Of a DNA stretch of 64,000 nucleotides, positions 3,121 to 64,000 are shown piece after piece; within the stretch, counting starts at the first letter, position 1, and every line of letters starts with the position of its first letter. The DNA is from Octopus sinensis (lineage: Eukaryota): positions 70,060,001 through 70,124,000 of the forward strand of contig NC_042999.1 of assembly GCF_006345805.1 (NCBI RefSeq), read 5' to 3'. The position numbers and the translations under genes are program-made. The notes under the pieces are model-generated. The model worked only from the letters and a program-made list of their open reading frames with translations. It ran no database searches and had not been told where the DNA came from.

Positions 3121-3280
3121 CACATTATTTACATTTGACGGATATTTGTCCTCATCTTGCTTGTTGTTAACACAACGTTTCGGCTGATATACTCTCCTTC
3201 CTTCATAAGGCGTCTTGGGGAAATTTCGAACCTGGGTTCTCATTCCTAAGGTATTTTTCGATGTTATTATTATGATTATG

Positions 3281-6837: not shown

Positions 6838-7390
6838 CGCAATGGCCCAGTGGTTGGGGCAGCGGACTCGCGGTTGTAGGATCGCGGTGAGCTGGCAGTG
6901 AGCTGGCAGAAGCGTTAGCACCCCGGGCGAAATGCGTAGCCGTATTTCGTCTGCCGTTACGTTCTGAGTTAAAATCCGTCAAGGTCGACTTTGCCTTTCA
7001 TCCTTTCGGGGTCGATAAATTAAGTACCAGTTACGCACTGGGGTCGATGTAATCGACTTAATCCGTTTGTCTGTCCTTGTTTGTCTCCTCTGTGTTTAGC
7101 CCCTTGTGGGTAATAAAGAAATAGGTTGTAGGATCGCGGTTTCGATTCCCGGACAGGTCGTTGTGAGAGTTTATTGATCGAAAACACCTAAAGCTCCACG
7201 AGGCTCCGACAGGGGGTGGGGTGGCGATCCCTGCCGTACTCTTTCGCCACAAGTTTCTCCCCCTCTTTCTTCTGTTGGCCTGCTCGCTTAGCCAGTGGGG
7301 TGGCGTCATTTGAAGGCTAAAGCAATGCGAAGCGCATTGTGACCAGCGGTGTGTAGCAACATCTGATAGCCTGGTCGGTCACGGTGATAT
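6838..7390 (+). mobile_element. SINE family C (tail type 2) interrupted by a SINE family A copy (about 6896-7125)
   Basis: The C head stops at taggatcgcggt (about 6890) and resumes with taggatcgcggtttcgattccc (about 7129). Confidence 0.75.
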
Positions 7391-9574: not shown

Positions 9575-10819
9575 CTAAAATATTAAGAATCTTAATTACA
9601 TGTCACTATACTATTTTCTATTAATTGAGATTATCTTATCTGCCTCCTTTTCACTTCTTGAAAGAACTACATTAATACTAATGTTTATTCCTTTTTTTTT
9701 TCTTCTTCAGTATTTGTGTAATTTTAAACTGTAATTATAACATTTGTCATCATATAAAAATTGGCTCACTCCATCGATATATATATATCCTGCACTCAAC
9801 TGTATGTCTTTTATGCAGAAGGCGTCGCAGAGAAAATCTCCCATCATATTATTTCAAACGGCCTAGTCAGTGAATCTTTTTCAATCTGAACATATATCTT
9901 CTCGGTACTGCGATTAGATGTTTGTTGCTTTTTTCTTTGTTTGTTTTCTTTTTGTTTTTGTCTTTTGTTTTCACTCAGGAGGTCTAATAACACTGAAACT
10001 TACCCACGGTTATCCCTGGGCTTGCTAAAGGTCAGAATTCACTTGTCTGTATCTTCCCAGCTATACAATTTGTAATCAATTTGTAATTCGGATTTCTCTC
10101 CCTTACATTTCTTCACAAAATTTAACATTAAGGCTGATGATTACGTTTACATTACGAGTGTTACTTTAATTTATTAACATTGGGGACGGATTCAGTAACA
10201 CATTATCTATGTTAGGCTCCACAAAACTAAAGATTACAGTGAGTTAAATAGATGCAGTTATGGCTTTGCACGTACACAAGATTCCAGGTTCAATCGAACA
10301 GCGTGGTTCCTAGAGCACATTCTTCGTTTATAGCTACGTTTTTGGCACAGCCGTTTTGGCGCCGCATATATATATATATATATGTGTGTGTGTATATGTA
10401 TATATAACAAAGTGGAGTTGTAAGGTACCGCACGAGTGGAATTATATATGAAAGAAGGTTTGAAAATGCAATTTTAAAAGATGTTTATTCACTTGACCGG
10501 TTTCACTTTTTTAGAAAAAGATTGTCAAAAGTAACATGTATATATATATATATATATATATATATGGCGTCGCTGAATCGATGCTGACTTCATTGTTAAC
10601 TTTCATTGTTAACTAAAAAAGTTAACAATGAAATCATAACTGACATTTATTATAAACCAACTGACTCAAAACAATATCTTCTTCGATATATAAAAAATTA
10701 TATTAAAACCATGTAAGTGTGCGTATTTTCCTTTTTTAATTTCTTATATACATTACAACCCACCACGTGGGGACAACCGAAATTCCTCTTTTCTGTTACT
10801 ACTATAAATATATATATAT

Positions 10820-13800
10820 ATATATATAGTAACCACAAGGACCACACACCCACTACCAACAAGAAAATCATACACACACAGCTCCATACAAGAACTACCC
10901 ACATTGTTACCACTGAGCAACATAAAACATAACTTAGAACAATGCAAACATCAAACTTCCCTTACCTCGACATTCCTGTTAAATGTACGTGGCATCAACC
11001 CATCAATTATTGCCCAAAAATGGAAGATTCCATATATAGAGAGTTGGCCTGCCGAAACGGCACATTGCTTCCCTTTCTTTATCCTTACCGAGACCCACCT
11101 GAACAACACCCATATGGACGCCGAGGTGAAAATAAAAGATTTCACCATTGTTCGTGCGGATCGCACAGACCGAAATAAGGGAGGAACAGCCATCTTTATC
11201 CATGACACCTTTTCACTTGATGCCAAGGACATATTTTCCAATGGCTATTGTGAATCTGTATCACTATTCAGCAAGGCCAAGGACATAATCATTGTTGGTC
11301 TTTACAGGCCTCCCCAAGCACCTCTAAAGTGCTTTGAAGAGTGCCTTAGCAAAGTCAAGTCCTTCCTTCGGAAGTATAACTCCGGAAACATACTAGTGAT
11401 GGGTGATTTTAACCTCCCTCATGTGAACTGGCCCACAAATACTCTGAAGTTAGGCAAATGCTCTACATCAGATAGAGCAGCAGCAGAACTGCTCTTTAAT
11501 CTGATGGATGAATACTTCCTGACTCAGCTAGTGCTCGAACCAACGAGGCAGAATAAAACGATCTTGGATCTGGTATTGACCAATCACTCTAGCTTCGTTC
11601 ACAGCATTTCAGTTGAAAACACTCTCCTCTCAGACCACGACATGGTACTCTGCAATTTTAATTCCCGACATATAAAAACCAAACCAGCCAATCCCACTCC
11701 ACGGCACTCATTTGACAACATAAACTTCCACAAAGCGGACTGGGGAGCAATCAGAAAGGATCTGTCTTTCATCGGCTGGTCTTTTACTCTCAATTCCACC
11801 CATATTGAGACCGCATGGCAGCACTTTGAAAACATTGTCACCTATACTGCTCTAAACACGCTCCCACGAAATCTACTAACACAAACAGAAACCGGCTCCC
11901 TAAAAAGAAAAAAAACACTCATCAGGCGTATCTAAAGACTCAACAAAAAAATCAACTAATTAAAATATTCCCACACACAACATCCACATTCAACAACAAT
12001 GAAAAGGCTAGAGCTGGAAAAACTTCATCTGCAGACCGACATGAAAACCTCCATTGAAAATCAAAGAGCTGTGGAGGAACAGTGGATAGTCAAAAACATC
12101 AAACAGAACCCAAAAGTGTTCTATTCTTATGCAAATAAGCATAGAACCACTGCCTCACCCATTGGGCCATTGATTGATGATAACGGCATTCCCCAACACG
12201 ATGCTAAAGAAATGGCAGAAATACTGCAGAAACAATACTGCTCTGTCTTCAGTGTTCCCACTGATATTGACGTAAGAGAAGCGAACGAAGTTGACTCCCA
12301 ACATAAAATCTCAGACATAACCTTCACTGCCACTGACGTCATAGCAGCAATAAATGAGGTCAAATACTACTCTGCTGTAGGCCCTGATAGATACCCCGCT
12401 AGTCTCCTGAAGGAATGTAGACACCAACTTGCAGTCTCTCTGACCAACCTCTGGAGAAATTCGTTAGACGCAGGTTATATACCGAAACAGTTTCTATCCC
12501 AGTCAGTCATCCCGGTTTTCAAACAGGGAAACATATCCCTCGCAGTCAACTATCGCCCAATCTCACTCACCTCCCACATCATTAAAGTGTTTGAAAGAGT
12601 GTTAAGATCAAGGATAGCTGACTTCCTGGAGACCCACAAACTCCTAAATGCAAATCAGCATGGCTTTCGCTGTGGCAGGGACTGTCTAACACAGCTCTTA
12701 CACCACATTAAAGATGTACTCAAAGCCTTGGGAACAGGTTCGAACTCTGATGCCATATATCTTGACTTCAGTAAAGCGTTCGACAGGGTAGACCATAATA
12801 TCCTACTCTCAAAATTGGCAAATGTTGGAATCCGTGGAAAAGTTCTACACTGGATTAAGTATTTCCTGGCGAATAGAACACAACATGTTGTAGTTGATGG
12901 AGTCCACTCAAGCCCAGCAAAAGTCACCAGCGGTGTCCCCCAGGGGACTGTCTTGGGTCCGCTACTCTTCATAATTTACATAAACGACCTTTCCAGTGTC
13001 GTACATTACTGCAAAGTGAAAATATTTGCTGATGACACTAAGCTCCAGCAAATCGTCAATGAAGAAGCAGACCGATCTCAACTCCAGTCTGATCTATATA
13101 CTGTGAGTCAATGGGCAGACAGAAACAAAATGCAACTGAACGAGGGAAAATTTGAGCTGATGCATTTTGGAAGAAATTCCTCACTAAAACAGCCATACTC
13201 TCTTCCTTCAGGGGAACCGCTCACAGCCTCTAACAATATCAGAGACCTGGGTGTAATTGTTGACAACGATCTCAGTTGGAGTGCACACATCAACAAGAAG
13301 GTCGATATAGCTCGTAGGATGAGTTCCTAGATCTTAAGAACTTTCCGGTCCAGAGAACAAGGTGTCCTCATACCACTTTTCTTCTCCTTTGTACGGCCAC
13401 ACCTCGAATACTGCTGCCCACAGTGGTCTCCCCATACAAGACAAAACATCTCGAGGATTGAATCACCCCAGAGGGCACTCACTAAACGAATTGAAGGCAT
13501 GGCTGCTCTCGATTATTGGGATCACCTTAAAGCCTTGAAACTCTACTCTCTCCAGCGTCGCCGTGAGCGGTACATCATTTGTACGATGTGGAGAATATAC
13601 CGCCAACTTTTCCCAAACGACCTGAACATTAGCTTCAAGGTTCATCCAAGACTGGGACCACGGGCCATACGTCCCCTGCCCAATTCAAGATCACAACATA
13701 CATGTACACTGCAACATAATTTCTTTTCCTCAACAGGCCCTGCCCTATTTAACATTGTCCCAAAAGAGATCAAAGAGGAAAAGGATCCCATCAACTTTAA

Positions 13801-14003
13801 ACGGAGTCTGGATAGATTCCTTCAAAGAATACCAGATAAGCCACCCATAATTGGATACAGTTCACCCAACAAAAACTCACTATTTGAATGGACCATAAAC
13901 AAAACTTGACTTAAACAGGATTCAAATAATCCTATCAGGTGGTGCTATTAAGTTAGACATGGTCTGGACCAATCTTTGGTCGAAACATATCTAAGTTTAT
14001 CTA

Positions 14004-14010
<7 letters not shown>
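10820..14010 (+). mobile_element. CR1/L2-group LINE, 5'-truncated, near-intact ORF2
   Basis: APE-RT ORF2 followed by a short 3' UTR and a (CTAAGTTTAT)2 tail running into (AT)n. The 5' boundary is approximate. Confidence 0.9.
10904..13909 (+). pseudogene. LINE ORF2: apurinic-type endonuclease + reverse transcriptase, interrupted
   Basis: APE motifs NVRGI, LTETHL, YRPP, MGDFNLP, LDLVLTN, SDH. RT motifs YRPISLTS, QHGFR, YLDFSKAFD, SGVPQGTVLGP, FADDTK. C-terminal YSLQRRRERY. The three ORFs share one frame, with stops near 11935, 11960 and 13330 (TGG>TAG inferred). Confidence 0.92.
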
Positions 14011-14055
<45 letters not shown>

Positions 14056-14094
14056 AATTAAATTAGAGATAAAACCACTATTATGTATTTCATT

Positions 14095-14470
14095 ATTACT
14101 CTTTACTCTTTTATTTGTTTCAGTCATTTTGACTGCGGCCTTTAATCGAACAACTCGACCCCGGGACTTATTCTTTTGTAAGCCTAGTACTTATTCTATC
14201 GCTCCCTTTTGCCGAACCGCTAAGTAACGGGGACATAAACACACCAACATCGGTTGTCGAGCAATGCTAGGGGGACAAACACACACACGCATATATATAT
14301 ATATATACGACGGGCTTCTTTCAGTTTCCGTCTACCAAATCCACTCACAAGGCTTTGGTCGGCCCGAGGCTATAGAAGAAGACACTTGCCCAAGGTGCCA
14401 CGCAGTGGGACTGAACCCGGAGCCATGTGGTTGGTAAACAAGCTACTTACCACACAGCCACTCCTGCGCC
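14095..14470 (-). mobile_element. SINE family B, near full length
   Basis: tRNA-like head (ggcgcaggagtggctgtgtggtaagtagc...gggttcagtccc), internal TA/CA microsatellite, (AGAGTAA)-type tail. Confidence 0.85.
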
Positions 14471-15530
14471 TATTAGATTATAACTATACGTTTTTTGTAA
14501 GTTATTACTTAGCCAACGAGATATATAGATTGTTAAATAGTTATACGGGTTTTTTTGTTTTTTTTTAAGATGGGTTATACGTTTATAATTTGCTTTTTCA
14601 TCTTTAATTTTTAAATATTTTTCATAAATATATTACATTAATGTTTAATATTCACGTAAGTAATAATGGAATAATTAATTTATTTAGTTTTCATTATACG
14701 TCTACATATTTATTGATAGAGAAAATTTTAGATCTTAATTATTATATTTATTCATAATAATTTAATTATTATTCTTAAATATTTTATAATTATTAGATTT
14801 GAACTTAATTTAAAAATATGAATAGTGATTATTTAGTTAAATAATTTGGTAATTAGATATTAACTATAACTAAGATTAGGATATTCGTGAGTTTATTATG
14901 ATTTTTAAAGCCATATTATATCCTAATAGATAAATACATTTTCTATCTATTTTTACCTTAAAAATTAATATTTAACATTATAATTGGGTTGTATGACATA
15001 ATCCTAATCGTTAAAGTTTCTAATTTGATAATAGTTTTTTATAAGAAAAATTATTATTTTATTTATTTCTTAAAAAAATTTGTTTAAATATATTTGCTTA
15101 TTTATTTAACTATTGTCATTAACCTGAAGATTGACTATATTTATAATTCGAATTTTTAATTGAATTTTTAATTCAATTTAAATTAATTGTAATTCGAATT
15201 GGGTTATGGCCATGAAACGTACGTAGTGGTTTTACTTAAAAGTTTAAAAATGTATAAATTTTAAATTTAAAAAATATTAAAAAATATAACAATTTATAAA
15301 TATAAATTAAAAATTTTAAATTCAAATAATTTAAATTTTAAATTTTATATATTTTGTGTATTATATTAATTATATTTATTTTTATGTTTTGGTTTATATT
15401 TTTCACTGTTTGATTTGCCTAATAGTGGTTTTATCTCTAATTTAATTTATATTTATACTGTGAAATTTGATTTAATCCTAAATCTAATATTTCCCTGTAA
15501 GTTTAGGTTTACTCCCTAATATTATTATTA
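14471..15530 (+). mobile_element. Extremely AT-rich element carrying a hammerhead motif; probable decayed Penelope-like 3' end
   Basis: Lines counted have 3-12 G+C per 60 nt. HHR core at 15124-15225. Weak GIY-YIG-like residue pattern (IW*LDINYN*D*DI) upstream. Confidence 0.45.
15118..15230 (+). ncRNA. Type I hammerhead ribozyme, degenerate
   Basis: CTGAAGA (15124-30), stem II TGACTAT/ATGGCCA, GAA, palindromic stem III ACGTACGT (15217-24), GUA site. Stem I is weak. Confidence 0.6.
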
Positions 15531-15533
15531 TTA

Positions 15534-15599
<66 letters not shown>

Positions 15600-16536: not shown

Positions 16537-16637
16537 CATATATATATATGTATATGTATATATATACATATACATATACATATATATATGTATATATATA
16601 CATATATATATGTGTATATATATACATATGTATATAT

Positions 16638-17862
16638 AGCAACGAATTGCCTCACCACACACCGAATTTAGAAATAGCAGTCAAAGAGTTATAGCTATTC
16701 TTTCTACTAAAAGGGAGATCTCAGTAAAAACACAGCACTTGAAAGGCAAACACAGACAGGTAAGAGAGAATGAAATGACGGCAATCTATCATACAATTTT
16801 AAGTCACCCACGGACGTACGTTTCGAAATTAAGTTTTAGGAAAGCATAAGAATTAGATAATTATGTCTTACCCAACTTCTTTTCTCATCAGCGTAGGACA
16901 CTACAATTATGAATAATTGTATATTAAATTTCGAGATACTAGAAGGCATCATCTCAACTCAGTATCAGAGCGAGCTAAAGCCGTTACCAGTATCACCAAA
17001 TTCAAAGTGTGAATGAAAGTTTGTGTCACCAACCCCTTCCCACCCGCGTGTAGCCAAGACAAGATGCTGTGGTCATTTACTGGGATGAAATATGGTTATC
17101 AGCAACAATATAGGGTGAAATTAATTAATTTGGAATAATCATTAATTACACCAAGTAGATTTCGGCATGTAAAAGCCTCATTCGAGGAAAGTTTAAGTAA
17201 TACTAAGTAATTAAGGGTTTAGCAACGAATTGCCTCACCACACACCGAATTTAGAAATAGCAGTCAAAGAGTTATAGCTATTCTTTCTACTAAAAGGGAG
17301 ATCTCAGTAAAAACACAGCACTTGAAAGGCAAACACAGACAGGTAAGAGAGAATGAAATGACGGCAATCTATCATACAATTTTAAGTCACCCACGGTGAA
17401 TGAAAGTTTGTGTCACCAACCCCTTCCCACCCGCGTGTAGCCAAGACAAGATGCTGTGGTCATTTACTGGGATGAAATATGGATATCAGCAACAATATAG
17501 GGTGAAATTAATTAATTTGGAATAATCATTAATTACACCAAGTAGATTTCGGCATGTAAAAGCCTCATTCGAGGAAAGTTAAAATTGTATGATAGATTGC
17601 CGTCATTTCATTCTCTCTTACCTGTCTGTGTTTGCCTTTCAAGTGCTGTGTTTTTACTGAGATCTCCCTTTTAGTAGAAAGAATAGCTATAACTCTTTGA
17701 CTGCTATTTCTAAATTCGGTGTGTGGTGAGGCAATTCGTTGCTAAACCCTTAATTACTTAGTATTACTTAAACTTTCCTCGAATGAGGCTTTTACATGCC
17801 GAAATCTACTTGGTGTAATTAATGATTATTCCAAATTAATTAATTTCACCCTATATTGTTGC
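16638..17862 (-). mobile_element. Hammerhead-containing 583-bp unit with partial tandem and inverted copies (retrozyme/Penelope pLTR-like), element X1
   Basis: 16638-16812 repeats at 17221-17395 (period 583). 17009-17193 repeats at 17396-17580. 17579-17862 is the reverse complement of 17102-17385. Flanked by (TA)n. Confidence 0.85.
16807..16897 (-). ncRNA. Type I hammerhead ribozyme, canonical core
   Basis: Minus strand: CCTACG-CTGATGA-GAAA..long stem II..TTTC-GAA-ACGTACGT-C/CGTGGG. Stem I 6 bp, G10.1-C11.1, GUC triplet. Confidence 0.88.
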
Positions 17863-24399: not shown

Positions 24400-24966
24400 C
24401 TATAATGAAAAAATAATATTTCCTTATAAGAGAATTTGGTACAATGACTTCAAGCTTAACTGTGTGTGTGTGTGTGCATGCGTGCGTGTGTGAGAGAGAA
24501 ATATGCACATCCACATGCTCTTTCACGTATGTTTGTGCGCTTTTTGGTACGCATTCACATGTTCTTTCGTGTGTGCGTGTGTGCGTGTGTGCACAGGGAG
24601 GTGTGCGTGTGTATGCGTGCGGTGCATTTTGTTGGCGTTGTTATTGTTCAGCCACGCGGTAGCTTCGATCGAGCAAGCAAGGCTTTCAAGGCGTAACCAT
24701 CCTGTTTACATTAATGTATTTTATATATATATATATTATATATATAATATATATATATATATATAATACGGTCGGATAGGTACAGTATATATATATATAA
24801 TATATAGGTACAATATATATATATATAATACGGTCGGATAGTACAATATGGCTAAATGGTTGAGAGGTTCGCTTCAGGTTCGATCCCACTGTATATATCA
24901 TTTTCTATAGCCTCAAGTCGACTCGTGCTTTGAGTGAAAATGGGTAAACAGAAACTGCAGAGAAAG

Positions 24967-25200
24967 CAGCGGCGAGCTGGCAGAAACGTTAGCACGCCGG
25001 GCGAAATGCTTAGCGGTATTTCGTTTGCCGTTACGTTCTGAGTTCAAATTCCGCCGAGGTCGACTTTGTCTTTCATCCTTTCGGGGTCGATTAAATAAGT
25101 ACCAGTGACGCAATGGGGTCGATATAATCGACTTAATCCGTTTGTCTGTCCTTGATTGTCCCTTCTGTGTTTAGCCCTATGTGGGTAGTAAAGAAATAAG
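24967..25200 (+). mobile_element. SINE family A
   Basis: ggcgagctggcagaaacgttagc head, core and tail. Confidence 0.85.
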
Positions 25201-25619
25201 AAATTGCAGAGAAAGCAGTGGACTGCACTTGTAATTTCAAAACTCTAGCTTTATATTTAGCCTTGTGTCACGCTGATCCTCCTCGAGAATAACGTTAAAT
25301 GCGCACGTGACTGTAGAATGTTGACGCCATGCAAGTTAATTCGGGAACAGCTAATTCACTAAGCCGGGCAATTGGATCTCTATCATTGAACTACGGAGAT
25401 CTACCACTACCATCAGTGTTCATATGAGAGAGATTTGACTGTTATTTTTAGTAGATCAATATCTATGTGTTAGTAGAGGGTTGGGGGTTACACAAAATAA
25501 TGAAATTGACAATATGTATATTTATAAAACTGAGACTCAAACTGATTCTGAGTTATTTATACCAAGTGGACTATGGTACCATAAACTATATGAAGTCCAG
25601 GACCATTATGTATATTATA

Positions 25620-28322: not shown

Positions 28323-28950
28323 CCTCAGGCTCACCAAAGCCTTGTGAGTGGTTTCGTACGCAGAAACTGAAAGAAGACTATCGTATATATGCGTATATTT
28401 GTGTGTATGTGTGTGTCTGTATTTGTAGCCTCACCATCGTTTGACAACTGATGTTGTTGTACATTATTTACATTATTTACATTTGACGGATATTTGTCCT
28501 CATCGTTTTGTTAACACAACTTTTCGGCTGATAATCTCTCCAGCCTTCTTTTGGTGTCCTGGGGAAATTTCGAACCTGAGTTCTCATTCCTTGGGTATTT
28601 TTCGATGTATGTATTTATACCAGGTGTGTGAATATAATTCAGGTTCTAAATTTCCCCAGCACACCTGAAGAAGGCTGGGGAGTATATCAGCCGAAACTTT
28701 GTGTTAACAACAAACAAGATTAGGACAAATATCCGTCAAATGTAAATAATGTACATAATTCCTCATCTCTCAAATATAGAACTGATGTTGCTGCGTTTGC
28801 GACTCCGTAACTTAACGGTTCAGCAAAATACACCGATAGAATACGTACTAGGCTTACAAAGAATGAATCCTGCGGTCGTTTTGTTTGACTAAAGGCGGTG
28901 CTCCAGCATGGGCGCAGTCACATGACTAAAACAAGTAAAACAAAAAAAAA
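28322..28950 (+). mobile_element. SINE family B interrupted by an inverted pair of hammerhead-bearing tails (28457-28779)
   Basis: aactgatgttg is repeated at 28446-28456 and 28780-28790, either side of the insert. Confidence 0.75.
28661..28704 (+). ncRNA. Minimal type I hammerhead motif (stem III G>T substitution)
   Basis: ACAC-CTGAAGA-A-GGCTG..CAGCC-GAAACTTT-GTGT. The copy at 3170 has GAAACGTT. Confidence 0.65.
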
Positions 28951-29629: not shown

Positions 29630-30700
29630 CACCTTTATCATTATGGCCGGGTTCCAACCCAGGCCTCAGCAACAAAGTCTGCCCGCCACACTTCTCGATC
29701 CATCATCACTGCGTCGATGTCCTGGATTTATTCCAGGCCAGTGCCTGCAATCAAGTTGTTGATGTAAGTGTGACGACGTCTTCCTCTTCTTAAATCTCCA
29801 TGAAGTGGATTTCACAAGGCTAATTTGGATACTTCCAGTGACGAGATGGCGAGCTGGAAGAATCGTTAGCACGCCGAGCGAAATGCTTAGCGGTGTTTCG
29901 TCTGCCACTACGTTCTGAGTTCAAATTCCGCCGGGGTCGACTTTGCCTTTCATCCTTTCGGGGTCGATTAAATAAGTACCAGTTGCGCACTGGGGTCGAT
30001 ATAATCGACTTAATCCCTTTGTCTGTCCTTGTTTGTCCCTTCTGTGTTTAGCACGTTGTGGGTAGTAAAGAAATAGGCATTTCGTCTGCCGCTGCGTTCT
30101 GAGTTCAAATTCCGCCGAGGTCGACTTTGCCTTTCGTCCTTTCGGGGTCGATTAAATAAGTACCAGTTGCGCACTGGGGTCGATATAATCGACTTAATCC
30201 GTTTGTCTGTCTTTGTTTGTCCCTTCTGTGTTTAGCACCTTGTGGGCAATAAAGAATTAAGATGGCGCGCGCAGTGGCTTGATCTTCTCGCTAACTTTTG
30301 GCAGGTTTCCATATAGGTATTCATTTGTCGTATGTTGCTACCGTTTCACATTTAGAGCTATTCATAGCATCCTTGTGTGATATCCATTTAGCCCGCTTGA
30401 TAACTTCTCTGCCAGTGTCCATGTTTCACTGCCATAAAATAGCACTGATTCCACAGTTACAATGAACAGCTTAATTTTGATCTACCTCAACAATTTGTAA
30501 TTCCAGACTTTCTTTAGTTTGTAACAGGCTGTCGATACTTGTGCCTTCCTGATCTTAATGTCTGCTTCCGAACCACTCACCTAAGTACTTGAAATCTTCA
30601 GCAATATTCAATTTGAAACTGCTCAAAGCAAACAGATCTTATCTTTCAACCAATCAAATGATACAGAACTGTTTGCTTTGAGCAGTTCCAAATTGAATGC
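29630..30700 (-). mobile_element. RTE-type LINE 3' fragment interrupted by tandem SINE A
   Basis: DFKYLGEW; RRGRRRHTYINNL...MMDREVWR. Confidence 0.6.
29845..30255 (+). mobile_element. SINE family A with a 184-bp internal tandem duplication
   Basis: ttcgtctgcc at 29897 and 30081. Confidence 0.85.
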
Positions 30701-39712: not shown

Positions 39713-39944
39713 TATGCAAAACTTTAATTGAAAACAACTGACTGTGCGGTGGTAACAACCTTAGGGCACGCAGAGACTACCCGGACCTCTTCGCTGTGAC
39801 TCGACTTGCTATAAATAGTAATCAAGTTCCCGTTTTCAATAAAGATGAATCACATTCGACCGAATAGGTTAACGATGTTCATTATTACCTGATGGGTGCA
39901 TTCGTGGTGGCTCAGTAGGTAAAAGGGTGTAGCGTGGTAAGGCA

Positions 39945-40520
39945 GTGAGCTGGCAGAAACGTTAGCGCGCCGGGCGGAATGCTTAGCAGTATTTCGTCTG
40001 CCGCTACGTTATGAGTTCAAATTCCGTCGAGGTCGACTTTGCCTTTCATCCTTTCGGGGTCGATTAAATAAGTACCAGTTACGCACTGGGGTCGATATAA
40101 TCGACTTAATCCGTTTGTCTGTCCTTGTTTGTCAACTCTGTGTTTAGCCCCCTGTGGGTAGTAAGGAAATAGGTATTTCTTCTGCGGTTACGTTCTGAGT
40201 TCAATCTCCGCCAAGGTCGACTTTGCCTTTCATCCTTTCAGGGTCGATAAATTAAGTACCAGTTACGCACTGGGGTCAATGTAATAGACTTAATCCCTTT
40301 GTCTGTCCTTGTTTGTCTCTTCTATGTTAACCCCTTGTGGGCAATAAAAAAATAAGAAACGTTAGCACCCCCGAATCAAAATATTGAGTGGCAATCCGTC
40401 CGTGTATATGTTCTGAGTTCAAATTCCGCAGGCGTCGACTTTGCCTTTTATTATATTTTTTTTTCGAGGTCAATGAAATAAGTACCAATGAAGTTCTGGG
40501 ATCGATGTAATCGAGCAGCC
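39945..40520 (+). mobile_element. SINE family A, multimeric
   Basis: 184-bp period (39993, 40177) plus a third partial copy. Confidence 0.85.
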
Positions 40521-44505: not shown

Positions 44506-45152
44506 GTATTAGAAATAGTTTTAAAAAAGTTTTTTAGCTACTATTTCTAATGAGTTCAGTATGCGGCAAAGTAATTTATTTTACTAAGCCCTTTTATATA
44601 ATGTAATAATTTGAATTCGCCTTAAATGGTCCCTTTGCATACTGAATACTTGGTGAAATTGATTAATAATTAATTAATTTTACCCTCAATTGTTGAAATT
44701 ATAATTCATCTCTCTCTATTTAATGCCTCGGATTTTACCGAAAAAAGCATAGTGTTTACTGATTTTAACCCACGCTGGTGGAAAGGGGAGAGCAGAAATT
44801 CTTCGCTTGCATATTTGAGTTTGCTGGCACTGTTAGTTTCGAGCAGATCTTCAGAAGCGATAAGAAGCCGAAAGGGTATGCTCCCACTTCAGTGTTTTCA
44901 AATCCAAACCAAGGAGTTCTGAGCTGATGATAGAAATGTCGAGTTGACTAATCTTGAAACGTACGTTCTCAAATAACCTTTGCATTTGATTTTTTAATGT
45001 CTTTACCCCCATACTTTCGTGAGTTGAATTGAGCAAACACTATATGAGAGAGGTTTTCTTTAAGTATTAGAAATAGTTTTAAAAAAGTTTTTTAGCTACT
45101 ATTTCTAATGAGTTCAGTATGCGGCAAAGTAATTTATTTTACTAAGCCCTTT

Positions 45153-45160
<8 letters not shown>
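44506..45160 (+). mobile_element. Hammerhead-containing 558-bp unit with a 97-bp terminal direct repeat, element X2
   Basis: 44506-44602 is repeated at 45064-45160; HHR at 44920-44971. Confidence 0.8.
44920..44971 (+). ncRNA. Type I hammerhead ribozyme with U10.1/U11.1
   Basis: TGAG-CTGATGA-T-AGA..GTC gagtt GAC..TCT-T-GAA-ACGTACGT-T/CTCA. Confidence 0.75.
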
Positions 45161-47510: not shown

Positions 47511-48034
47511 ACACACACATATATATATAGGGAGAGTTTACGAAAAAAACAAAAGGCGAAGACAGGTGGTGTACAAAACAAATAGATGTATTAGTATAAC
47601 GCTCAGGAATAGAAAAAAACTTTTACGTTCGAGCCTACGCTCTTCTACAGAAAGGGACACAGAAAAAGTAAGACCTTCCCTTTGTCTCTTTTCGGATATT
47701 ATTATATATATATATATATATAATATATATATATATATATAATATATATAATATAATAATAAGGTAAATAATTTCTATAAGGTTTTTTAAAAAAACCACA
47801 ATTATTACTGGTAAATTCGGTATGTAAATATAGCCGATTACCGGCAGGAACTATCAAGTTTCAGTATATATATTGTATATAGAAAAAGGGACAGCAACAG
47901 GTTGCTTGACCGCTACCGAAAAAGTAGACATAGTTTAATTCTTATTTCTATCAAAGTGGACTCCGGGCACGACAAGCCCTGTAATTCACATATGCCAAAC
48001 AGAAGATAGATATCTTAAACGAAGTCGTGGTTAT

Positions 48035-48142
48035 CTGTGAACATCATGTTCTGGATTATAAACATATTGAATATATATTTCATATATTTTTGATATATAT
48101 TTCATATACATTGCATATTATTTCACATCCTCTTCAGCACAG
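48035..48142 (-). ncRNA. Second hammerhead copy in X3, with GAA core scrambled to AGA
   Basis: Same stems I and III as 48665-48774. The difference may be a sequencing error. Confidence 0.55.
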
Positions 48143-48664
48143 CTTCCATTGAAATAGATTTATCATAGATTTATCAAATGCTACTTACCTCAAACCTTCT
48201 GACCATGGACATCAAAATATTTGAAGAAAACGAGCAAAGGCTAACCTACATAGACGTTTGAATTCGTAAACTTCCCTCCAAAATTTTGCCATGCGCACTA
48301 CAAAAATAGTTCCATGGGAGTAGGAACTATTGGGTTGTCGTAAGGAGTGAAAAATCCAATTAGTAATATAATAATAGGGTAAATAATTTCTATAAAGGTT
48401 TTTTAAAAAAACCACAATTATTTACTGGTAGAATTCGGTATGTAAATATAGCCGATTACCGGCAGGAACTTCTGTAAAGTTCAGTATATATATTGTATAT
48501 AAGAAAAAGGGACAGGCAACAGGTTGCTTGACCGCATACCGAAAAGTAGAAATAGTAGTCAAGAATGCTATTTCTATCAAAGTGGGACTCCGGGCACGAC
48601 AAGCCCTGTAATTCACATATGCAAAACAGAAGAATAGATATCGAAAACGAAGTCTGGTGGTTAT

Positions 48665-48774
48665 CTGTGAACATCATGTTTCGGTATAAACATATTGAAT
48701 ATATATTTCATATATATTTTTGATATATATTTCATATACATTGCATATATATTTCACATCCTTCTTCAGCACAG
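48665..48774 (-). ncRNA. Type I hammerhead ribozyme with a long AT-rich stem/loop II
   Basis: CTGTG-CTGAAGA-A-GG..CC-GAA-ACA tga TGT-T/CACAG. Stem I is 5/5 bp. Confidence 0.8.
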
Positions 48775-49449
48775 CTTTCCATTGAAATAGATTTATCATA
48801 GATTTATCAAATGCTACGTACCTCAACCTTCTGACCATGCGACATCAAAATATTTGAAGAAAACGAGCAAAGGCTAAACCTACATAGACGTTTGAATTCG
48901 TAAATCTCCCTCCAAAATTTTGCCATGCGCACTACAAAAATAGTTCCATGGGAGTAGGAACTATGGGTTGTCGTAAGGGGTGAAAAATCCAATTAGTAAT
49001 ATATAATAGGGGTAAATAATTTCTATAAGGTTTTTTAAAAAAACCACAATTATTTACTGGTGAATTCGGTATGTAAATATAGCCGATTACCGGCAGGAAC
49101 TTCTGTAAAGTTCAGTATATATATTGTATATAAGAAAAAGGACAGGCAACAGGTGCTTGACGCATACCGAAAAATAGAAATAGCAGTCAAGAATGCTTAT
49201 TTCTATCAAAGTGGGACTCCGGGCACGACAAACCCTGTAATTCACATATGCAAAACAGAAGGAATAGATATCGAAAACGAAGTCTGGTGGTTTTCGATAT
49301 CTATTCCTTCTGTTTTGCATATGTGAATTACAGGGTTTGTCGTGCCCGGAGTCCCACTTTGATAGAAATAAGCATTCTTGACTGCTATTTCTATTTTTTC
49401 GGTATGCGGTCAAGCAACCTGTGCCTGTCCCTTTTTCTTATATATATAT

Positions 49450-49499
<50 letters not shown>

Positions 49500-51760: not shown

Positions 51761-52382
51761 GATCTCGTAATCTATATATCTAAGTGCTAACGTTCAGTAT
51801 GTTTGTTTTGCTTTCCTTCTTTTTTATGTTTTATCTTGTTTTGCTTCATTTTTTTTTTTTTTTTTTTGCTTTTTTTGCTCCTAGGGGAATAAAAGACAGT
51901 CTCCATGATGCTAAATTCTTGTGATTGGTATATCAAGGAAGTTATTCTCACACAGGAAACTTGGCCTCGACGCTTGCTTCAGAGTAAACTCCGTTAAAGG
52001 TAGTCAAAGATCAAGTGATGGTGTTAAACTGAGTGACGGATTAAGTTTAAGAATCAAAAACGCAGAAGGCAAAGATCTGGAACAAATAGCAGATGATCTC
52101 TTGTCCGACGCTCTAATAATTCCACCAATCCACCATCTGTTACTTTATTTATCGACCACGAAAAGATGAAAGAAAAAATTGATCTTGACGCCGACGGTAT
52201 TTGAACACAGAGAACCAGAACAAACTCACCTTTTATTTCTCTGCCTGTCCTCCTGATTGCTAATCCCTTTCACCCTAGACTCTGTACTGGACACTGTTGC
52301 ACAATAATACCCCCACCTCCATATAACTGCAAACCTCAGGAATATTCTCCGTGCCAAAAGTTAGTCTCCAATTAAAGTAATG

Positions 52383-52575
52383 AACTGACAGAATCGTTAG
52401 CACACCGGGCAAAATGCTTAGCGGCATTTCGTTCGTTTTTACGTTCTGAGTTCAAATCCCACCGAGATCGACTTTGCCTTTCATTCCTTTCGGGGTCGAT
52501 AAAATAAGTACTTGTCGAGTACTGGGGTCAATGTAATCGACTTACTCTCTCTCCCCGAAATTGCTGGCCTTGTGC
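52383..52575 (+). mobile_element. SINE family A variant
   Basis: Head and core present. Similar copies at 58190-58390 (+), 55370-55525 (-) and 60175-60345 (-). Confidence 0.75.
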
Positions 52576-55591: not shown

Positions 55592-57806
55592 CATTTATTT
55601 GCCACAAGGGCGAAGGATGGGGGGTCAATACAGAGATAGACATAAAGTGTGTGGTTTACATATAATGAAATGATAAAAGAATAGTAAGTATACACGGTGT
55701 GCACTGAAAAAGAAGGGACTTATGCATAGCGTAAAAAGGTTAAAAAAAATGGCAGGGATGATGATACAGATGTGGCCCTCCTGATACAAGAAGGCCCCCT
55801 AGGGATAAACGAGGAACCTCACTGTTCGAGATTTCCCTGAAACTCTAGGAGCAACTGCCCTCTCCAATTCCTTCTCTCCGACTCACAGGTCTACACTTAG
55901 AGAGGTACCATCCACTCTTGCTATTTCCGCAACTTTCACCCACCTTTCAATAAACTTACTCGAGGACAGCACTTCCCTCTCCACTCTCAGTTTCCTTTTC
56001 AAGTGAAACTTGAAGATGTCACTGAGAGCTCTACCAAAAAGGAATGTATTTGTCCTCATGCCTTTCAGCCTTGTCCACCAAACAACCTCTTCCGCGACGG
56101 CCACCAGGCAAGGGAAAACTGCCTTGTCTGTCCGATTGAAGGAGGGTGGTGGTGCAATCATCCCTGCAGACTCGGCCGACAGAGGGATCCGTCCCACACG
56201 TGAGAGCAGCTGCTCGACATAACCCCACAAGTCAGCAATGTCCGGACACTGAACGAGATCGTACAGAACGGTTTCGTTACTGTGCGCACCTCGGACAAGC
56301 CCGTCTGACAGCACATCCGTGCCTGAAGAGCTTGTCTCGAACCGGTAGCGCCCCCTGATAGCATTGCCAAGCCAAAGACATCTTGAAATTATCCATGATA
56401 GTTCCCGACCGGAAAGTCCTCCGGAACAGACTAGCCACTTCGTTTTCATCGGCGCTTATAGTTTCCCCGACACTAATTCTCTATAAATTTCTAAAACGGA
56501 ACGTCCACCGATCCCATTGTCTCACTGGTAAAGGGTTGTAAGCGCCTGACAACATTCAAGGTGCCCAGTCTCGGTCTTTTCTTTACCCAGGACTGCAGCT
56601 CCGTCAAAAAGACGATCTGCGGAAAGACGAGCTTCACAAACGAAGCCCACACATGCTCACCGTCCAGAAATTGTTGCAGGCGGCGTAATCTTAGCGCGTT
56701 TCTGCGCATTAGAAGCCACGGCAAACCTAATCCGCCACTCAGAGGATGCTGGCAACAGACTGACCGCCTGACCATTGGAACGCGTCCCTTTCACAAGAAT
56801 AAGAGACGCTCCAACCTGATCAAGCAGTAACCGGGACAAGGCACGACGGTCAGGCGATAAATGATAACGGAGGCATTCGCCACCTCTTCAGGTACAGCTT
56901 TATTTCAACTTGTCAAAGTTCTTACCAGCCTGGAGGTCGAAACCAAACCAGACCCCGAATACTTTAACTGGTTCGTCGGTCCAGCGTCCGACGACGCCAT
57001 CCGAAAGCTTCATTCTGCCTCTCCAGGAGCCCAACAGCAAACCAACCGATTTGTTGGCGTTGATATCAGCCCCTACAACCGATTCATATTCCTTTAGGAA
57101 GGTGCCGACCGTCTCAACTTTGGAGGTGTCCGACACCATGACGGTGACGTCCGCGTATGCTGACACTGCCCCTCCTTGTCCCAGTTCGAAAGGGATGCTC
57201 CTTAGTTGTTCCAACTTCTGAAACAGTGGCTCGTGTGCCAATACGCATAGAAGAAGCGACAGTGGACAGCCCTGACGGACCAAGCGTGCGATGCCAAACG
57301 GTTCTGATAGGTGGCCGTTTACTTTGACCACTGAACAAGTGCCGCTGTGCATTGCAGCGATCAAGCCTCTGAAAACGGATCCTAAACCGCCTACTTTCAG
57401 GACGGCTTCCCAGTAATGATGGTCGATCCTATCGAATGCTTTTCATTGATCCAAATGGATCAGAGCACCTCCGAAGTCAGCTGTGGTCCCAGCCCTCTCT
57501 ATGACGTATTGCATAAGGTGGGGGTTGTGGATAGACCTGCTCGGGATTACGTACATTTGCACTTCTCCGACCAGGCTACCGACGACAAGCGCCAACCTTT
57601 TCGCTAACACCTTGGCTAAAATCCTAAACTGTTTAGCAGAGTTATGAGTCGAAAATTCTCTAGTACATTGTCGGCGTCCTTCCTCAGCAGTGTCACCACA
57701 CCTCTGCTAACAGCACTAGGAATTCTCCCGTTCTGTTGCCAGTTGCAGTAGACGTCTGCCAAGAGATCGCCAAATAAATCTGTCATGAATACATAGATTT
57801 CGTAAC
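55590..57806 (-). mobile_element. Tx1/L1-clade LINE, 5'-truncated, frameshifted
   Basis: NFRLITLLN; LDQ*KAFDRIDH; VRQGCPLS; AYADV; GADINANKS; GGLGLP; zf-RVT-like C terminus; AATAAA then an (ATC)n tail. Confidence 0.9.
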
Positions 57807-58929
57807 ATTTTCTTTATTAACCACAAAACTCATTAAAAAGATCGAGTATGATACAGGATAGCATAGGAGAATGCAGTGTGGAATTGCATTAAACAGCGTG
57901 TAAACAAGACAAATAACAAAAATATAAAAATTCCCTAAAAGGACTACTCGTGGACACCCAACAAAACTTACCTTACCGGCTTATAAAAATTTCGTGGTGG
58001 TTAATGAAATCTTGGAAACATTTATTTCAAAAAAATGAAAAGAAAACCTCATCAAACTCGAAAGCTTTAGATTATGGAACTGATAGATAAAAGCTGATAT
58101 GAAAGTTAAACAAAAAGGACAAGGAATTAACTGATTAGTGATTAAGCACAATTCTCTGTTCTCTAATATGAGAGAGTAAAATTAAGGCTGCGAGCTGACA
58201 GAATCGTTACCGCACCGGGCAAAAGGCTTGGCGGCATTTCGTCCGTCTTTACGTCGTGTGATAAAATTCCGCCGAGGTTGACTTTGCCTTTCATCCCTTT
58301 CGGGGTCGATAAAATAAGTAGCACTAGGTCGATGTTATCGACTTACTCCCTCCCCCGAAACTGCTGGCCTCGTGCAAAAATTTGAAGCCGGTAAAGAGCA
58401 ACATACCTGCTGAATGGATTCGAACCACATATCTACCACTTATTAAGTATTCTATGTTACACGTTAGATTCCTCTACTTGACATCTAAACATTTATTTCA
58501 TTGTTTGAATTTCTTGCATTACTATCTACCAACGTAAACTGTCACTGCGTACCTCAATGTTACTACATTCCCATTATTACAATACAGAGGGTTTGTTATT
58601 CTCGGTTCTAAACTTAGCTACTACTAAGAAATACTTTTCTTGAAATGTAAATAAGCATTTTTTGTTTCTGAAGTAAATCACTTAAAGTATTTTAATTTAT
58701 TTATTTTGTTAGTTAAGTTGATAACCATTGGATTTGTGAACAATAATGCAGTAGGTTACTAAAGGGGCAATCACTATTTCATTTTCTTTACGATAGAGGG
58801 GTTAGCAAGTGAATGTGCGTGTGTTACACAGAGCTGAGCAAATATCTCAGGGAATTTGCGTTAAAAAAATTCGAGTTATCATTTATCTAAAGGATCTTTA
58901 CATAATCCTTTCTACTATAGGTAGAAGGC

Positions 58930-63119: not shown

Positions 63120-63348
63120 TTTTTTTTACTACCCACAAGGGGCTAAACACAGAGAGGACAAACAAGGACAGACAAATGGATTAAGTCGATTACATCTACC
63201 CCAGTGCGTAACTGGTACTTATTTAATTGACCCCGAAAGGATGAAAGGCAAAGTCGACCTCGGCGGAATTTGAACTCAGAATGTAACGGCAGACGAAATA
63301 CGGCTACGCATTTCGCCCGACGTGCTAACGTTTCTGCCAGCTCGCCAC
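63120..63348 (-). mobile_element. SINE family A
   Basis: Head, core and tail present. Confidence 0.85.
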
Positions 63349-64000
63349 CTTGGCGTGATGTATTACCAATACGGCCATACCGCAGGTTGCAATTGCAATC
63401 TACTATATTGCCAATTATCACTTTTATCGTTCTCGCAGTTGTTATTGTTGTTGTTTTTGGTCAAACGCATGCCAGGCGTGACCACCCGGCCATATTTTTC
63501 GGACATAATGTATCTAAGGCTACTGTGTCCTATTTAGGAAGTCGAGGTGTTATTGTCTGCTATTTAAATGTACATGCATCTATGCATGTGTGTGTCTGTG
63601 TGTAGTGAATATGTGCATATTTTATGCATGCAAAAACAACTCCACGAAAGACAGAAAAAAGAGTATTCAATAAGTATTGTAGAGTTTTGTGTATGGAAAC
63701 ATCCTAAACCGTTCCTTTTAGTTTCACGTTCCGAACTTCGGGCGGCAGTGGATGTTGGAACAAGTAGAAGTAGCTTATGCAACGAAACCTCCGTAAACTA
63801 GACACTCTTAAATAAGTATAACTTTTACCAGAACGAGATTCACTACAGAAGGACAATCATGCAATATTAATGTATGATACAATATAATAAATTATAAAAC
63901 CACCATAAACCAAGAATCCCCTTCTATTCAAAAAAGGGGCAAATATTTTTGTATAAAGGCGAACCCTGATTGGGTGCATAGCCGCCAAGTACATAATAAA

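What the first reader, a model, noticed from the sequence alone, without database searches (positions are those of the whole stretch)
44509..44646. Unrecognised multi-helix RNA domain with compensatory changes, shared by X1, X2 and X3
P1 hairpin: TAGAAATAG/CTATTTCTA. P2 12-bp helix: X1 TTCGGTGTGTGG (17715-26)/TTACATGCCGAA (17792-803); X2 TTCAGTATGCGG (44555-66)/TTGCATACTGAA (44635-46); X3 TTCGGTATGCGG/TTACATACCGAA (minus, 48532-43/48434-45). P2 position 4 is G-C in X1 and X3 but A-U in X2; position 10 is U-A in X1, C-G in X2 and a C.A mismatch in X3. P3 hairpin: GGCAA-UUCG-UUGCU, AGUAA-UUUAUU-UUACU, GCAA-CCUG-UUGC (C-G vs U-A). P4 has different sequences but always pairs: CCUC/GAGG, GCC/GGU, GCCG/CGGC. 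G.U wobbles work only on the hammerhead-sense strand, pointing to RNA rather than DNA structure. It does not match the hammerhead, HDV, twister or pistol consensus as I recall them. It could be an RT-recognition signal, a stability/circularisation element or a new catalytic motif.
Basis: partly seen in the sequence, partly recalled or inferred. Interest (0 to 1): 0.88.

Follow-up and report, generated by a model that had tools for sequence, protein, structure and literature searches.

The report
Folded core of hammerhead retrozyme repeats
The reported helices are real and keep their pairing through compensating mutations, but they are the conserved folded core of a known kind of selfish element: ORF-less tandem repeats that carry hammerhead ribozymes ("retrozymes", relatives of Penelope-like retrotransposons), here apparently in an octopod genome.

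Summary
All helices sit at the stated coordinates. Each of the three sequences folds on its own into the same architecture. X1 and X2 differ at 19 paired positions, yet 31 of 32 pairs survive, 7 of them through double compensatory changes (null P ≤ 2e-5).

Two corrections are needed. P2 is 10 bp, not 12: its two G's pair with the conserved CCC and form the base of the P3 arm. The G·U strand argument is equivocal within the domain. X3 has three C·A/A·C mismatches and its domain folds better as antisense. Whole-unit energies do favour the hammerhead strand in all three.

The context explains the domain. X1, X2 and X3 are 583-, 558- and ~633-bp tandem units without an ORF. They lie in tandem and inverted arrangements inside (TA)n microsatellites. 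X1 and X2 carry a type-I hammerhead with a 2-bp helix III and a palindromic GUAC loop; the X3 copy is degenerate. One X1 unit has a 196-nt deletion ending at the predicted cleavage site.

The domain is the best-conserved block of the unit and sits at the tip of a unit-long rod. No Rfam family matches it. I found no homologues outside the window and no evidence of catalysis. Its function is inferred: a cis-acting fold, possibly the platform where reverse transcription is primed.

The parts
44510..44549 (+). X2 P1 hairpin (TAGAAATAGT / ACTATTTCTA, 10 bp, 20-nt loop that can pair internally)
   Evidence: Nine pairs are invariant. The 10th covaries: C-G in X1, U-A in X2, C·A in X3a.
44555..44646 (+). 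X2 three-way-junction domain closed by the 10-bp long-range helix P2 (44555-44564 / 44637-44646). Contains P2.1 (44565-44567 / 44588-44590), P3 (44570-44574 / 44581-44585), the UA-rich single strand J3/4 (44591-44618) and P4 (44619-44622 / 44627-44630).
   Evidence: MFE and centroid folds, covariation counts, coordinates.
44652..44684 (+). X2 P5 hairpin (GGUGAAAUUGAU.../...AUUAAUUUUACC), just outside the reported interval. It is followed by the conserved tail CUCAAUUGUUG (44685-44695).
   Evidence: A hairpin is present at the same place in X1 (17812-17850) and X3 (48426-48378) with a different sequence. It is AT-rich, so the column alignment is ambiguous.
44919..44967 (+). X2 type-I hammerhead: CUGAUGA core at 44924, helix II closed by U·U, GAAA, helix III of 2 bp plus a GUAC loop. 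The predicted cut is between 44967 and 44968.
   Evidence: Not called by Rfam.
44968..45160 (+). Start of the next X2 unit (leader, P1, P2 5' arm, P3). It is 99% identical to the first copy from 45064 on and ends in J3/4 against (TA)n. Unit period is 558 bp.
17671..17862 (+). X1 domain, plus-strand copy: P1 17675-17712, P2 17715-17724 / 17794-17803, P3 arm 17725-17748, P4 17777-17788, P5 17812-17850. The copy ends at 17862 against a TA/TG microsatellite.
16637..17583 (-). X1 partial tandem on the minus strand: a 3' part of a unit (17583-17489), a spacer with a 196-nt deletion (17488-17386), a full domain block (17385-17102), a spacer with the hammerhead (17101-16803), and a second block truncated just after P3 (16802-16637). 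Period is 583 bp. It is inverted relative to the plus-strand copy.
   Evidence: (I1, I5).
16813..16897 (-). X1 type-I hammerhead: helix I CCUACG/CGUGGG (6 bp), CUGAUGA, a long helix II closed by G-C, GAAA, helix III ACGUACGU. The predicted cut is after 16813.
   Evidence: Not called by Rfam.
47749..49295 (-). X3 tandem of about 2.5 units (~595-633 bp). Domains lie at 49209-49058, 48580-48426 and 47954-47809. The hammerhead region is degenerate (UUGAUGU...GAGGUACGUAGC). The array ends 17 nt after P5 against (TA)n.
49290..49456 (+). Inverted, truncated X3 copy placed head-to-head with the minus-strand array. It ends in J3/4 against (TA)n.

Best explanation
The 138-nt region is the conserved, base-paired core of an ORF-less, hammerhead-bearing tandem retroelement. 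The element fits the non-LTR retrozyme class, that is, a non-autonomous derivative of Penelope-like elements. Three diverged subfamilies (X1, X2, X3) lie in this window.

Shown here:
- The units are 558-633 bp and have no ORF.
- They are arranged in tandem and inverted, inside (TA)n microsatellites.
- X1 and X2 carry type-I hammerheads on the same strand as the domain.
- The domain is the best-conserved block of the unit.
- Its helices are maintained by compensatory substitutions.
- The whole unit folds significantly better than shuffles, and better on the hammerhead strand. The domain (P1, the P2-P3-P4 junction, P5) forms the branched tip of a long rod made by the 5' leader pairing with a G-rich block about 200 nt downstream.

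Inferred from the published retrozyme model: multimeric transcripts are cut by the hammerheads, which act as dimers through the palindromic GUAC loop. Monomers fold, are circularised by a host ligase, and are copied by a reverse transcriptase supplied in trans.

My committed but weakly supported reading of the domain's own job: it is a cis-acting module needed for propagation. A rigid junction presents UA-rich single strands (J3/4 and the tail after P5). Nicked (TA)n target DNA anneals to these strands and primes reverse transcription.

Confidence by part: about 0.85 that this is a selected RNA fold inside a retrozyme-like element, and about 0.3 for the priming-platform role. The 0.6 below averages the two.
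For: Element identity:
- Hammerhead cores, helices and cut sites were read directly and found by my own descriptor.
- Helix III of 2 bp with a palindromic tetraloop, a U·U at the base of helix II, and hammerheads on opposite strands are all described for metazoan and PLE hammerheads (PMC4209133, PMC7229834).
- Tandem and inverted arrangement and (TA)n insertion bias are described for PLEs (PMC8557442).
- A 196-nt deletion ends at the predicted cleavage site, within 1 nt. This is what a template switch at the 5' end of a self-cleaved RNA would leave.
- Only short spurious ORFs are present.

Structure:
- Searches support the domain fold and its covariation.
- Full units: X1 -160.1 kcal/mol (z -5.98) against antisense -121.6 (z -1.95). 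X2 -147.2 (z -5.42) against -129.4. X3 -155.4 (z -4.76) against -148.7.
- The domain helices persist in the MFE and centroid structures of all three full units.
- The conservation profile peaks over the domain.

Priming idea: all five array 3' ends in the window abut (TA)n. They fall immediately after P3 or in J3/4 (16637, ~45160, ~49445), or 11-17 nt after P5 (17862, 47749).
Against: - Only three independent lineages, all from one 64-kb window. No homologue was found elsewhere.
- Rfam hammerhead models do not score the X1 or X2 ribozymes even at E <= 10. Cleavage is untested.
- No Penelope-like ORF is in the window.
- The units are longer than the 170-400 nt typical of described animal retrozymes.
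- X3 breaks 4 of 32 pairs and folds at least as well as antisense within the domain.
- In the full-length X1 fold, the lower half of P1 is displaced by an alternative pairing.
- The five termini are few and were grouped after the fact. They coincide with UA-rich stretches that could seed microsatellites after insertion.
- A LINE in the window also ends in (TA)n, so the TA runs could be retroposition tails rather than targets.
Confidence: 0.6

Rival explanations
1. Generic compaction. The helices are simply part of a viroid-like, highly self-paired fold. That fold protects the RNA from nucleases and holds the hammerhead in an inactive conformation in the monomer. No protein or primer recognises the domain specifically.
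For: - Whole units are strongly structured.
- In X2 the 5' end pairs with an internal segment instead of forming hammerhead helix I.
- Published retrozyme circRNAs are described only as stable and highly self-paired (PMC7229834, PMC7761336).
Against: - Generic compaction does not require the same sequences. Here the arms of P1 and P2 are the most conserved bases of the unit, while most of the rod differs between subfamilies.
- The array ends cluster in and next to the domain.
Confidence: 0.3
2. The copies are pieces of the pseudo-LTR or untranslated region of full-length autonomous Penelope-like elements, not a separate non-autonomous family. The domain would then be that element's own UTR signal, such as a transcript-processing, translation or promoter-proximal element.
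For: - The tandem plus inverted 5'-truncated arrangement and the microsatellite flanks are typical of PLE insertions (PMC8557442).
- Retrozymes and pLTRs are reported to be homologous (bioRxiv 10.64898/2026.07.22.740005).
Against: - Successive hammerheads or unit starts are 558-633 bp apart with no room for an ORF.
- No RT/GIY-YIG ORF was found anywhere in the window.
Confidence: 0.15
3. A DNA-level feature. The palindromes are binding sites for dimeric factors or an internal promoter, or they form cruciforms or hairpins in single-stranded cDNA.
For: - The arms of P1 and P2 are conserved in sequence.
- Within the domain both strands fold about equally well.
Against: - Compensatory changes connect positions about 80-100 nt apart. 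Protein binding sites do not predict that.
- X1 uses G·U pairs that are C·A on the other strand. Whole-unit energies favour the hammerhead strand by 7-38 kcal/mol.
Confidence: 0.05
4. A new self-cleaving or self-ligating ribozyme.
For: It is a conserved junction next to a known ribozyme, and no known family matches it.
Against: - The junction strands are short or variable. J3/4 is 28-46 nt and not conserved.
- The only invariant unpaired bases are CUU after the P3 arm and UUU before P2.
- The one processing-like junction seen in the window is at the hammerhead site, not in the domain.
Confidence: 0.03

Closest known systems
Metazoan non-LTR retrozymes (Cervera & de la Pena 2020, PMC7229834; review PMC7761336)
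   Same: - Short tandem repeats without an ORF, with one type-I hammerhead per unit.
- Weak helix III with a palindromic loop, which implies dimeric cleavage.
- Low GC.
- RNA predicted to be highly self-paired.
- Association with Penelope-like elements.
   Different: - Units here are 558-633 nt, against about 170-400 nt in the described cases.
- Arrays are short (3 units or fewer) and mixed with inverted copies.
- A non-ribozyme block is conserved in sequence and pairing across three diverged subfamilies. [quoted passage not shown]
- Circular RNA has not been shown here.
Pseudo-LTRs of Penelope-like elements with minimal hammerheads (PMC4209133, PMC8557442)
   Same: - A hammerhead sits in a terminal repeat.
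- Partial tandems with an adjacent inverted 5'-truncated copy.
- Insertion into microsatellites.
- A second hammerhead element of the PLE minimal type is also in the window (28657-28705).
   Different: - No RT/GIY-YIG ORF lies between repeats.
- The X1 and X2 hammerheads have a 2-bp helix III with a tetraloop, rather than the fully minimal form.
Plant LTR retrozymes and hammerhead viroids (Avsunviroidae) (PMC4918200, PMC7761336)
   Same: - A 0.25-1-kb non-coding RNA with hammerheads.
- Rod-like or branched folds.
- The ribozyme is inactive in the compact monomer.
   Different: - Those use type-III hammerheads.
- Plant retrozymes have LTRs, a PBS and a PPT.
- Viroids replicate RNA to RNA and are not encoded in the genome.
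3' stem-loops shared by 'stringent' LINE/SINE pairs such as eel UnaL2/UnaSINE1 (from my own knowledge, not tested here)
   Same: This is only a functional analogy for the inferred role: a conserved structured RNA element, next to a short repeat tail, that lets a non-autonomous element borrow an RT and sets where priming starts.
   Different: - A different RT class.
- There, a single hairpin at the very 3' end. Here, an internal three-way junction plus hairpins in a possibly circular template.
- No partner autonomous element has been identified.

Membership tests
Type-I hammerhead ribozyme (context of the domain; X1 and X2) | Conserved core CUGANGA ... GAAA, followed by helix III and an H (non-G) base at the cleavage site | tested here: met
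   X1: CUGAUGA...GAAA-CGUACG-UC|C. X2: CUGAUGA...GAAA-CGUACG-UU|C. In X3 the core is mutated (UUGAUGU...GAGGU), so the feature is not met for X3.
Type-I hammerhead ribozyme (context of the domain; X1 and X2) | Three helices around the core, with helix I open | tested here: met
   X1: helix I of 6 bp, helix II closed by G-C, helix III of 2 bp plus a GUAC loop. X2: helix I of about 4 bp, helix II with U·U at its base, the same helix III. Both variants are described in PMC7229834 and PMC4209133.
Type-I hammerhead ribozyme (context of the domain; X1 and X2) | Score against the Rfam hammerhead covariance models | tested here: not met
   No hammerhead family was reported at the gathering score or at E <= 10, even in a 111-nt search. 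The long helix II and the very short helix III probably explain this.
Type-I hammerhead ribozyme (context of the domain; X1 and X2) | Self-cleavage at the predicted site | not testable with these tools
   Indirect evidence only: a 196-nt deletion in one X1 unit ends at the predicted site, within 1 nt.
Metazoan non-LTR retrozyme | Head-to-tail repeats of a few hundred bp, each with a type-I hammerhead, and no ORF, LTR, PBS or PPT | tested here: met
   Periods are 583, 558 and ~595-633 bp. Only spurious ORFs of 108 aa or less lie within the X units; two longer ORFs (115 and 174 aa) listed at the edge of the X3 array run mostly through flanking microsatellite. No tRNA-like part. Caveats: the arrays are short and the units are larger than the described range.
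Metazoan non-LTR retrozyme | RNA predicted to be stable and highly self-paired | tested here: met
   z = -5.98, -5.42 and -4.76 for the full units.
Metazoan non-LTR retrozyme | Accumulates as monomeric circular RNA | not testable with these tools
Penelope-like element (autonomous) | RT plus GIY-YIG endonuclease ORF between the repeats | tested here: not met
   No such ORF was found. The RTs in the window are LINE-type: an APE+RT at 10904-13330, and a fragment at 56900-57364 with the RQGCPLS motif.
Any Rfam family (for the domain itself) | Match of the P1-P4 region to a curated covariance model | tested here: not met
   Zero matches at gathering. Between E = 1 and 10 only noise falls on the domain, for example CRISPR-DR50 at 44508-44551 with E = 8.9.
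Known small self-cleaving ribozyme classes (twister, twister-sister, pistol, hatchet, HDV-like, hairpin, VS) | Match to the class consensus | tested here: not met
   These families are included in the Rfam scans. None was reported over X1, X2 or X3 at E <= 10.

The most novel reading that the evidence does not exclude
The domain is the missing cis-acting signal of animal retrozymes. It would be a three-way junction, flanked by two hairpins, that a Penelope-like reverse transcriptase recognises. It would hold out UA-rich single strands that base-pair with nicked (TA)n DNA to prime rolling-circle reverse transcription. This would explain both how ORF-less hammerhead repeats are mobilised and why they land in TA microsatellites.
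Probability: 0.25. Interest if true: 0.7.

Novelty: new member of a known kind. Interest (0 to 1): 0.42.

Why it matters
Animal retrozymes are abundant, but how they are copied is unknown. The field's own review says their repeats show no conserved motif that points to the machinery they use (PMC7761336). Here three diverged subfamilies share a block kept in both sequence and pairing, and array ends cluster in and next to it. That gives a concrete, testable candidate for the recognition or priming signal. It also extends hammerhead retrozyme-like repeats to what appears to be an octopod genome. If the domain turns out to be only part of a generic compact fold, the result is an ordinary annotation of a repeat family.

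Tried and rejected
- Rfam, at gathering over the whole window and at E <= 10 over the three loci plus a 111-nt hammerhead stretch. Only AT-rich miRNA-like noise came back. No ribozyme matched, not even the hammerhead.
- A covariance model of the domain (R1), run without filters over the window. It found only the nine copies or fragments already known from BLAST. A 19.7-bit hit at 10060-10166 is unrelated on inspection.
- Homologues elsewhere by exact pattern scans of JGI metagenomes, GTDB genomes and IMG/VR. The seven hits were all chance: they lack the partner arms and score nothing with R1.
- More cephalopod DNA through proteins:
  - The LINE RT search showed the closest named relative is Argonauta hians at 56%.
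  - Two Argonauta loci (44 kb) contain no copy of the domain.
  - Exact look-up of ORFs overlapping the repeats found nothing.
  - A conserved carboxyltransferase exon from the Argonauta locus retrieved only compact non-cephalopod genomes.
- tRNA origin: none.
- A pseudoknot between the P1 loop (UUGAC) and GUCAA at the base of P3. It is possible in X3 only, so I rejected it.
- MAFFT could not align P4 and P5. I aligned P4 by hand and passed it in with N padding. The P5 column counts are not reported as statistics because the helix is AT-rich and its alignment is ambiguous.

Full report
**What is there**

In X2 they are:
- P1: 44510-44519 / 44540-44549
- P2: 44555-44564 / 44637-44646
- P3: 44570-44574 / 44581-44585
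- P4: 44619-44622 / 44627-44630

A further hairpin, P5 (44652-44684), lies just beyond the reported interval. It recurs at the same place in X1 and X3 with a different sequence.

**Is it more than chance?**

Each sequence, folded on its own, gives the same architecture: a P1 hairpin, then a 10-bp long-range helix closing a junction that holds the P3 arm and P4. The z-scores against dinucleotide shuffles are -2.2, -5.4 and -4.6.

I built a structural alignment of the three (A3).
- 94.8% of the 96 pair cells are standard pairs.
- 8 of 32 pairs change on both sides.
- Only 3-5 of 500 shuffles reach these values.
- Sliding the partners by 1-3 columns drops pairing to 32-45% and double changes to 0-2.
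- RNAalifold returns the same structure.

The consensus energy was compared with column-shuffled alignments. It gives z = -9.2 for a purely sequence-based MAFFT alignment and -14.1 for the manual one. None of 300 shuffles reaches the observed value.

The cleanest comparison is X1 against X2. 19 of 64 paired columns differ, yet 31 of 32 pairs are intact in X2.
- 8 pairs changed on both sides, 7 of them compensatory.
- All 3 single changes give G·U.
- A random-placement null gives P <= 2e-5.

Three of those seven pairs are in P4, which I had to align by structure. Without P4 there are still five compensatory pairs out of five double changes.

**Corrections to the observation**

The next pair covaries (U-A, C-G, U·U). 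So P2 is 10 bp and P3 is a longer arm with an internal loop.
- The claim that G·U pairs work only on the hammerhead strand holds for X1 and X2 but not for X3.
  - X3 has C·A, C·A and A·C at three paired positions.
  - Its domain is more stable as antisense (-49.6 vs -37.2 kcal/mol).
  - The alignment-level test does not separate the strands.
- X3 keeps 28 of 32 pairs. Its sister copies carry indels inside P2 and P3, as expected for decaying genomic copies.

**Context: the three X's are units of hammerhead-bearing tandem repeats**

BLAST within the window shows more copies.

X1:
- It occurs on the minus strand as a partial tandem, 17583 to 16637, with a period of 583 bp.
- A 100%-identical inverted copy lies at 17579-17862 (I1 and I5).

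X2:
- A second unit starts at 44968 and is recognisable from 45064. The period is 558 bp.

X3:
- It forms about 2.5 units on the minus strand (49295-47749, ~595-633 bp).
- A truncated inverted copy lies at 49290-49456.

Near the 3' end of the X1 and X2 units there is a type-I hammerhead on the same strand as the domain.
- X1 (minus strand, 16897-16813): CCUACG-CUGAUGA-G...C-GAAA-CGUACG-UC|CGUGGG.
- X2 (44919-44967): GAG-CUGAUGA-U...U-GAAA-CGUACG-UU|CUC.
- My own descriptor recovers the X1 motif, with helix I of 6 bp and the ACGUACGU palindrome scored as helix III, read here as 2 bp closing a palindromic GUAC loop.
- X2 differs by a U·U at the base of helix II.

Both features are described for animal and Penelope-like hammerheads, which are thought to cleave as dimers (PMC4209133, PMC7229834). 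X3 has a recognisably homologous but mutated core.

Rfam's hammerhead models do not report any of these, even at E <= 10 in a 111-nt search. The identification therefore rests on direct reading, not on a curated model.

**Evidence that RNA was the template**

One X1 unit (17488-17386) lacks 196 nt. The deletion's 3' boundary coincides, within 1 nt, with the predicted hammerhead cleavage site. A reverse transcriptase that reached the 5' end of a self-cleaved RNA and then switched template would leave this junction.

The units contain only short spurious ORFs and no tRNA-like part. Every array is embedded in TA/TG microsatellite.

Tandem plus inverted 5'-truncated copies and a microsatellite bias are the published signature of Penelope-like insertions (PMC8557442). 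Animal retrozymes are now argued to be non-autonomous derivatives of these elements (bioRxiv 10.64898/2026.07.22.740005).

No Penelope-like ORF is in the window. The two RTs found are LINE-type. The closest named relative of the LINE RT is from the octopod Argonauta hians at 56% identity. A tRNA-derived-looking SINE is common in the window. This is consistent with a cephalopod source.

**Where the domain sits in the whole RNA**

Full units fold far better than shuffles, and better on the hammerhead strand.

| Unit | Sense, kcal/mol (z) | Antisense, kcal/mol (z) |
|---|---|---|
| X1 | -160.1 (-5.98) | -121.6 (-1.95) |
| X2 | -147.2 (-5.42) | -129.4 (-4.51) |
| X3 | -155.4 (-4.76) | -148.7 (-4.59) |

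In all three MFE and centroid structures, P2, the P3 arm, P4 and P5 persist. They form the branched tip of a long rod. The rod is made by a pyrimidine-rich leader pairing with a G-rich block about 200 nt downstream. In X1 the lower half of P1 is displaced by an alternative pairing. The domain is also the best-conserved block of the unit.

So the 'unrecognised domain' is real. It is best described as the conserved core of a retrozyme-type fold. Such RNAs are already known to be 'stable and highly self-paired' (PMC7229834).

**How it probably works**

Steps taken from the published model, not shown here: multimeric transcription, dimeric hammerhead cleavage, ligation to a circle by a host ligase, and reverse transcription by an RT supplied in trans.

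For the domain itself I commit to a cis-acting role in propagation, with a specific but weakly supported version. The junction presents UA-rich single strands (J3/4 and the tail after P5). Nicked (TA)n target DNA anneals to them and primes reverse transcription.

The only evidence is positional. All five array 3' ends in the window abut (TA)n.
- Three lie just after P3 or in J3/4: 16637, ~45160 and ~49445.
- Two lie 11-17 nt after P5: 17862 and 47749.

There are only five ends. I grouped them after seeing them, and UA-rich stretches could seed microsatellites later. A LINE in the window also ends in (TA)n.

The main rival is that the helices serve only general compaction and hammerhead regulation. 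A DNA-level role is unlikely, given compensatory changes 80-100 nt apart and the whole-unit strand asymmetry. Nothing points to a new ribozyme.

**Novelty and limits**

The kind of element is known. The instance (apparently cephalopod, 558-633-nt units) and the conserved non-ribozyme block are not described in the papers I could search. The field's review states that animal retrozyme repeats show no conserved motif pointing to their mobilising machinery (PMC7761336). This makes the block a useful candidate.

The evidence is limited to three lineages in one window. Every attempt to find homologues elsewhere failed.

Noticed in passing
window 28455-28750: An inverted pair of a different, Penelope-type minimal hammerhead element. 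The right arm (28657-28705, +) has an intact core: CACAC-CUGAAGA-A-GGCUG...CAGCC-GAAA-CUUU-GUGUU. In the left arm the core is mutated. A related fragment lies near 3225-3262 next to a (TTA)n array.
   Followed up: partly
window 14060-15540: An element of about 80% AT, flanked by (TA)n on both sides. It has GAAACGTACGTA at 15214 (the same helix III palindrome as the X1 and X2 hammerheads), CTGAAGA about 90 nt upstream, and 24-nt inverted termini (14060-14083 / 15421-15444). It may be a decayed relative. It has no copy of the domain (R1 score 10 bits).
   Followed up: partly
window 17386-17488 (minus strand): An X1 unit with a 196-nt deletion whose 3' edge is the predicted hammerhead cleavage site. 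This looks like the footprint of a template switch at the end of a self-cleaved RNA.
   Followed up: yes
window 49232-49336: A 105-nt near-perfect hairpin that scores 60 bits against Rfam MIR7696, below that family's gathering score of 83. It is the head-to-head junction of two X3 copies, not a microRNA gene.
   Followed up: yes
window 17102-17385 and 17579-17862: A 284-nt inverted repeat at 100% identity, 193 nt apart, with microsatellite on both outer sides. It is either a very recent Penelope-style tandem/inverted insertion or an assembly artefact. I cannot tell which from the window.
   Followed up: no
window 10904-14010: A LINE with an APE endonuclease ORF (10904-11935) and an RT ORF (11999-13330). 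Its best named relative is an Argonauta hians protein at 56% identity. Its 3' end seems to be a short hairpin (GACCAATCTTTGGTC) followed by (TA)n. A second LINE-type RT fragment lies at 56900-57364 (-).
   Followed up: partly
window 6890-7126, 24964-25273, 29841-30334, 39937-40358, 52372-52491, 58182-58301, 63121-63351 (inverted): A frequent SINE-like repeat that looks tRNA-derived, although ARAGORN calls no tRNA. It often occurs as two copies 184 bp apart (...GTTCTGAGTTCAAATTCCGCCGAGGTCGACTTTGCC...). It is unrelated to the finding.
   Followed up: no
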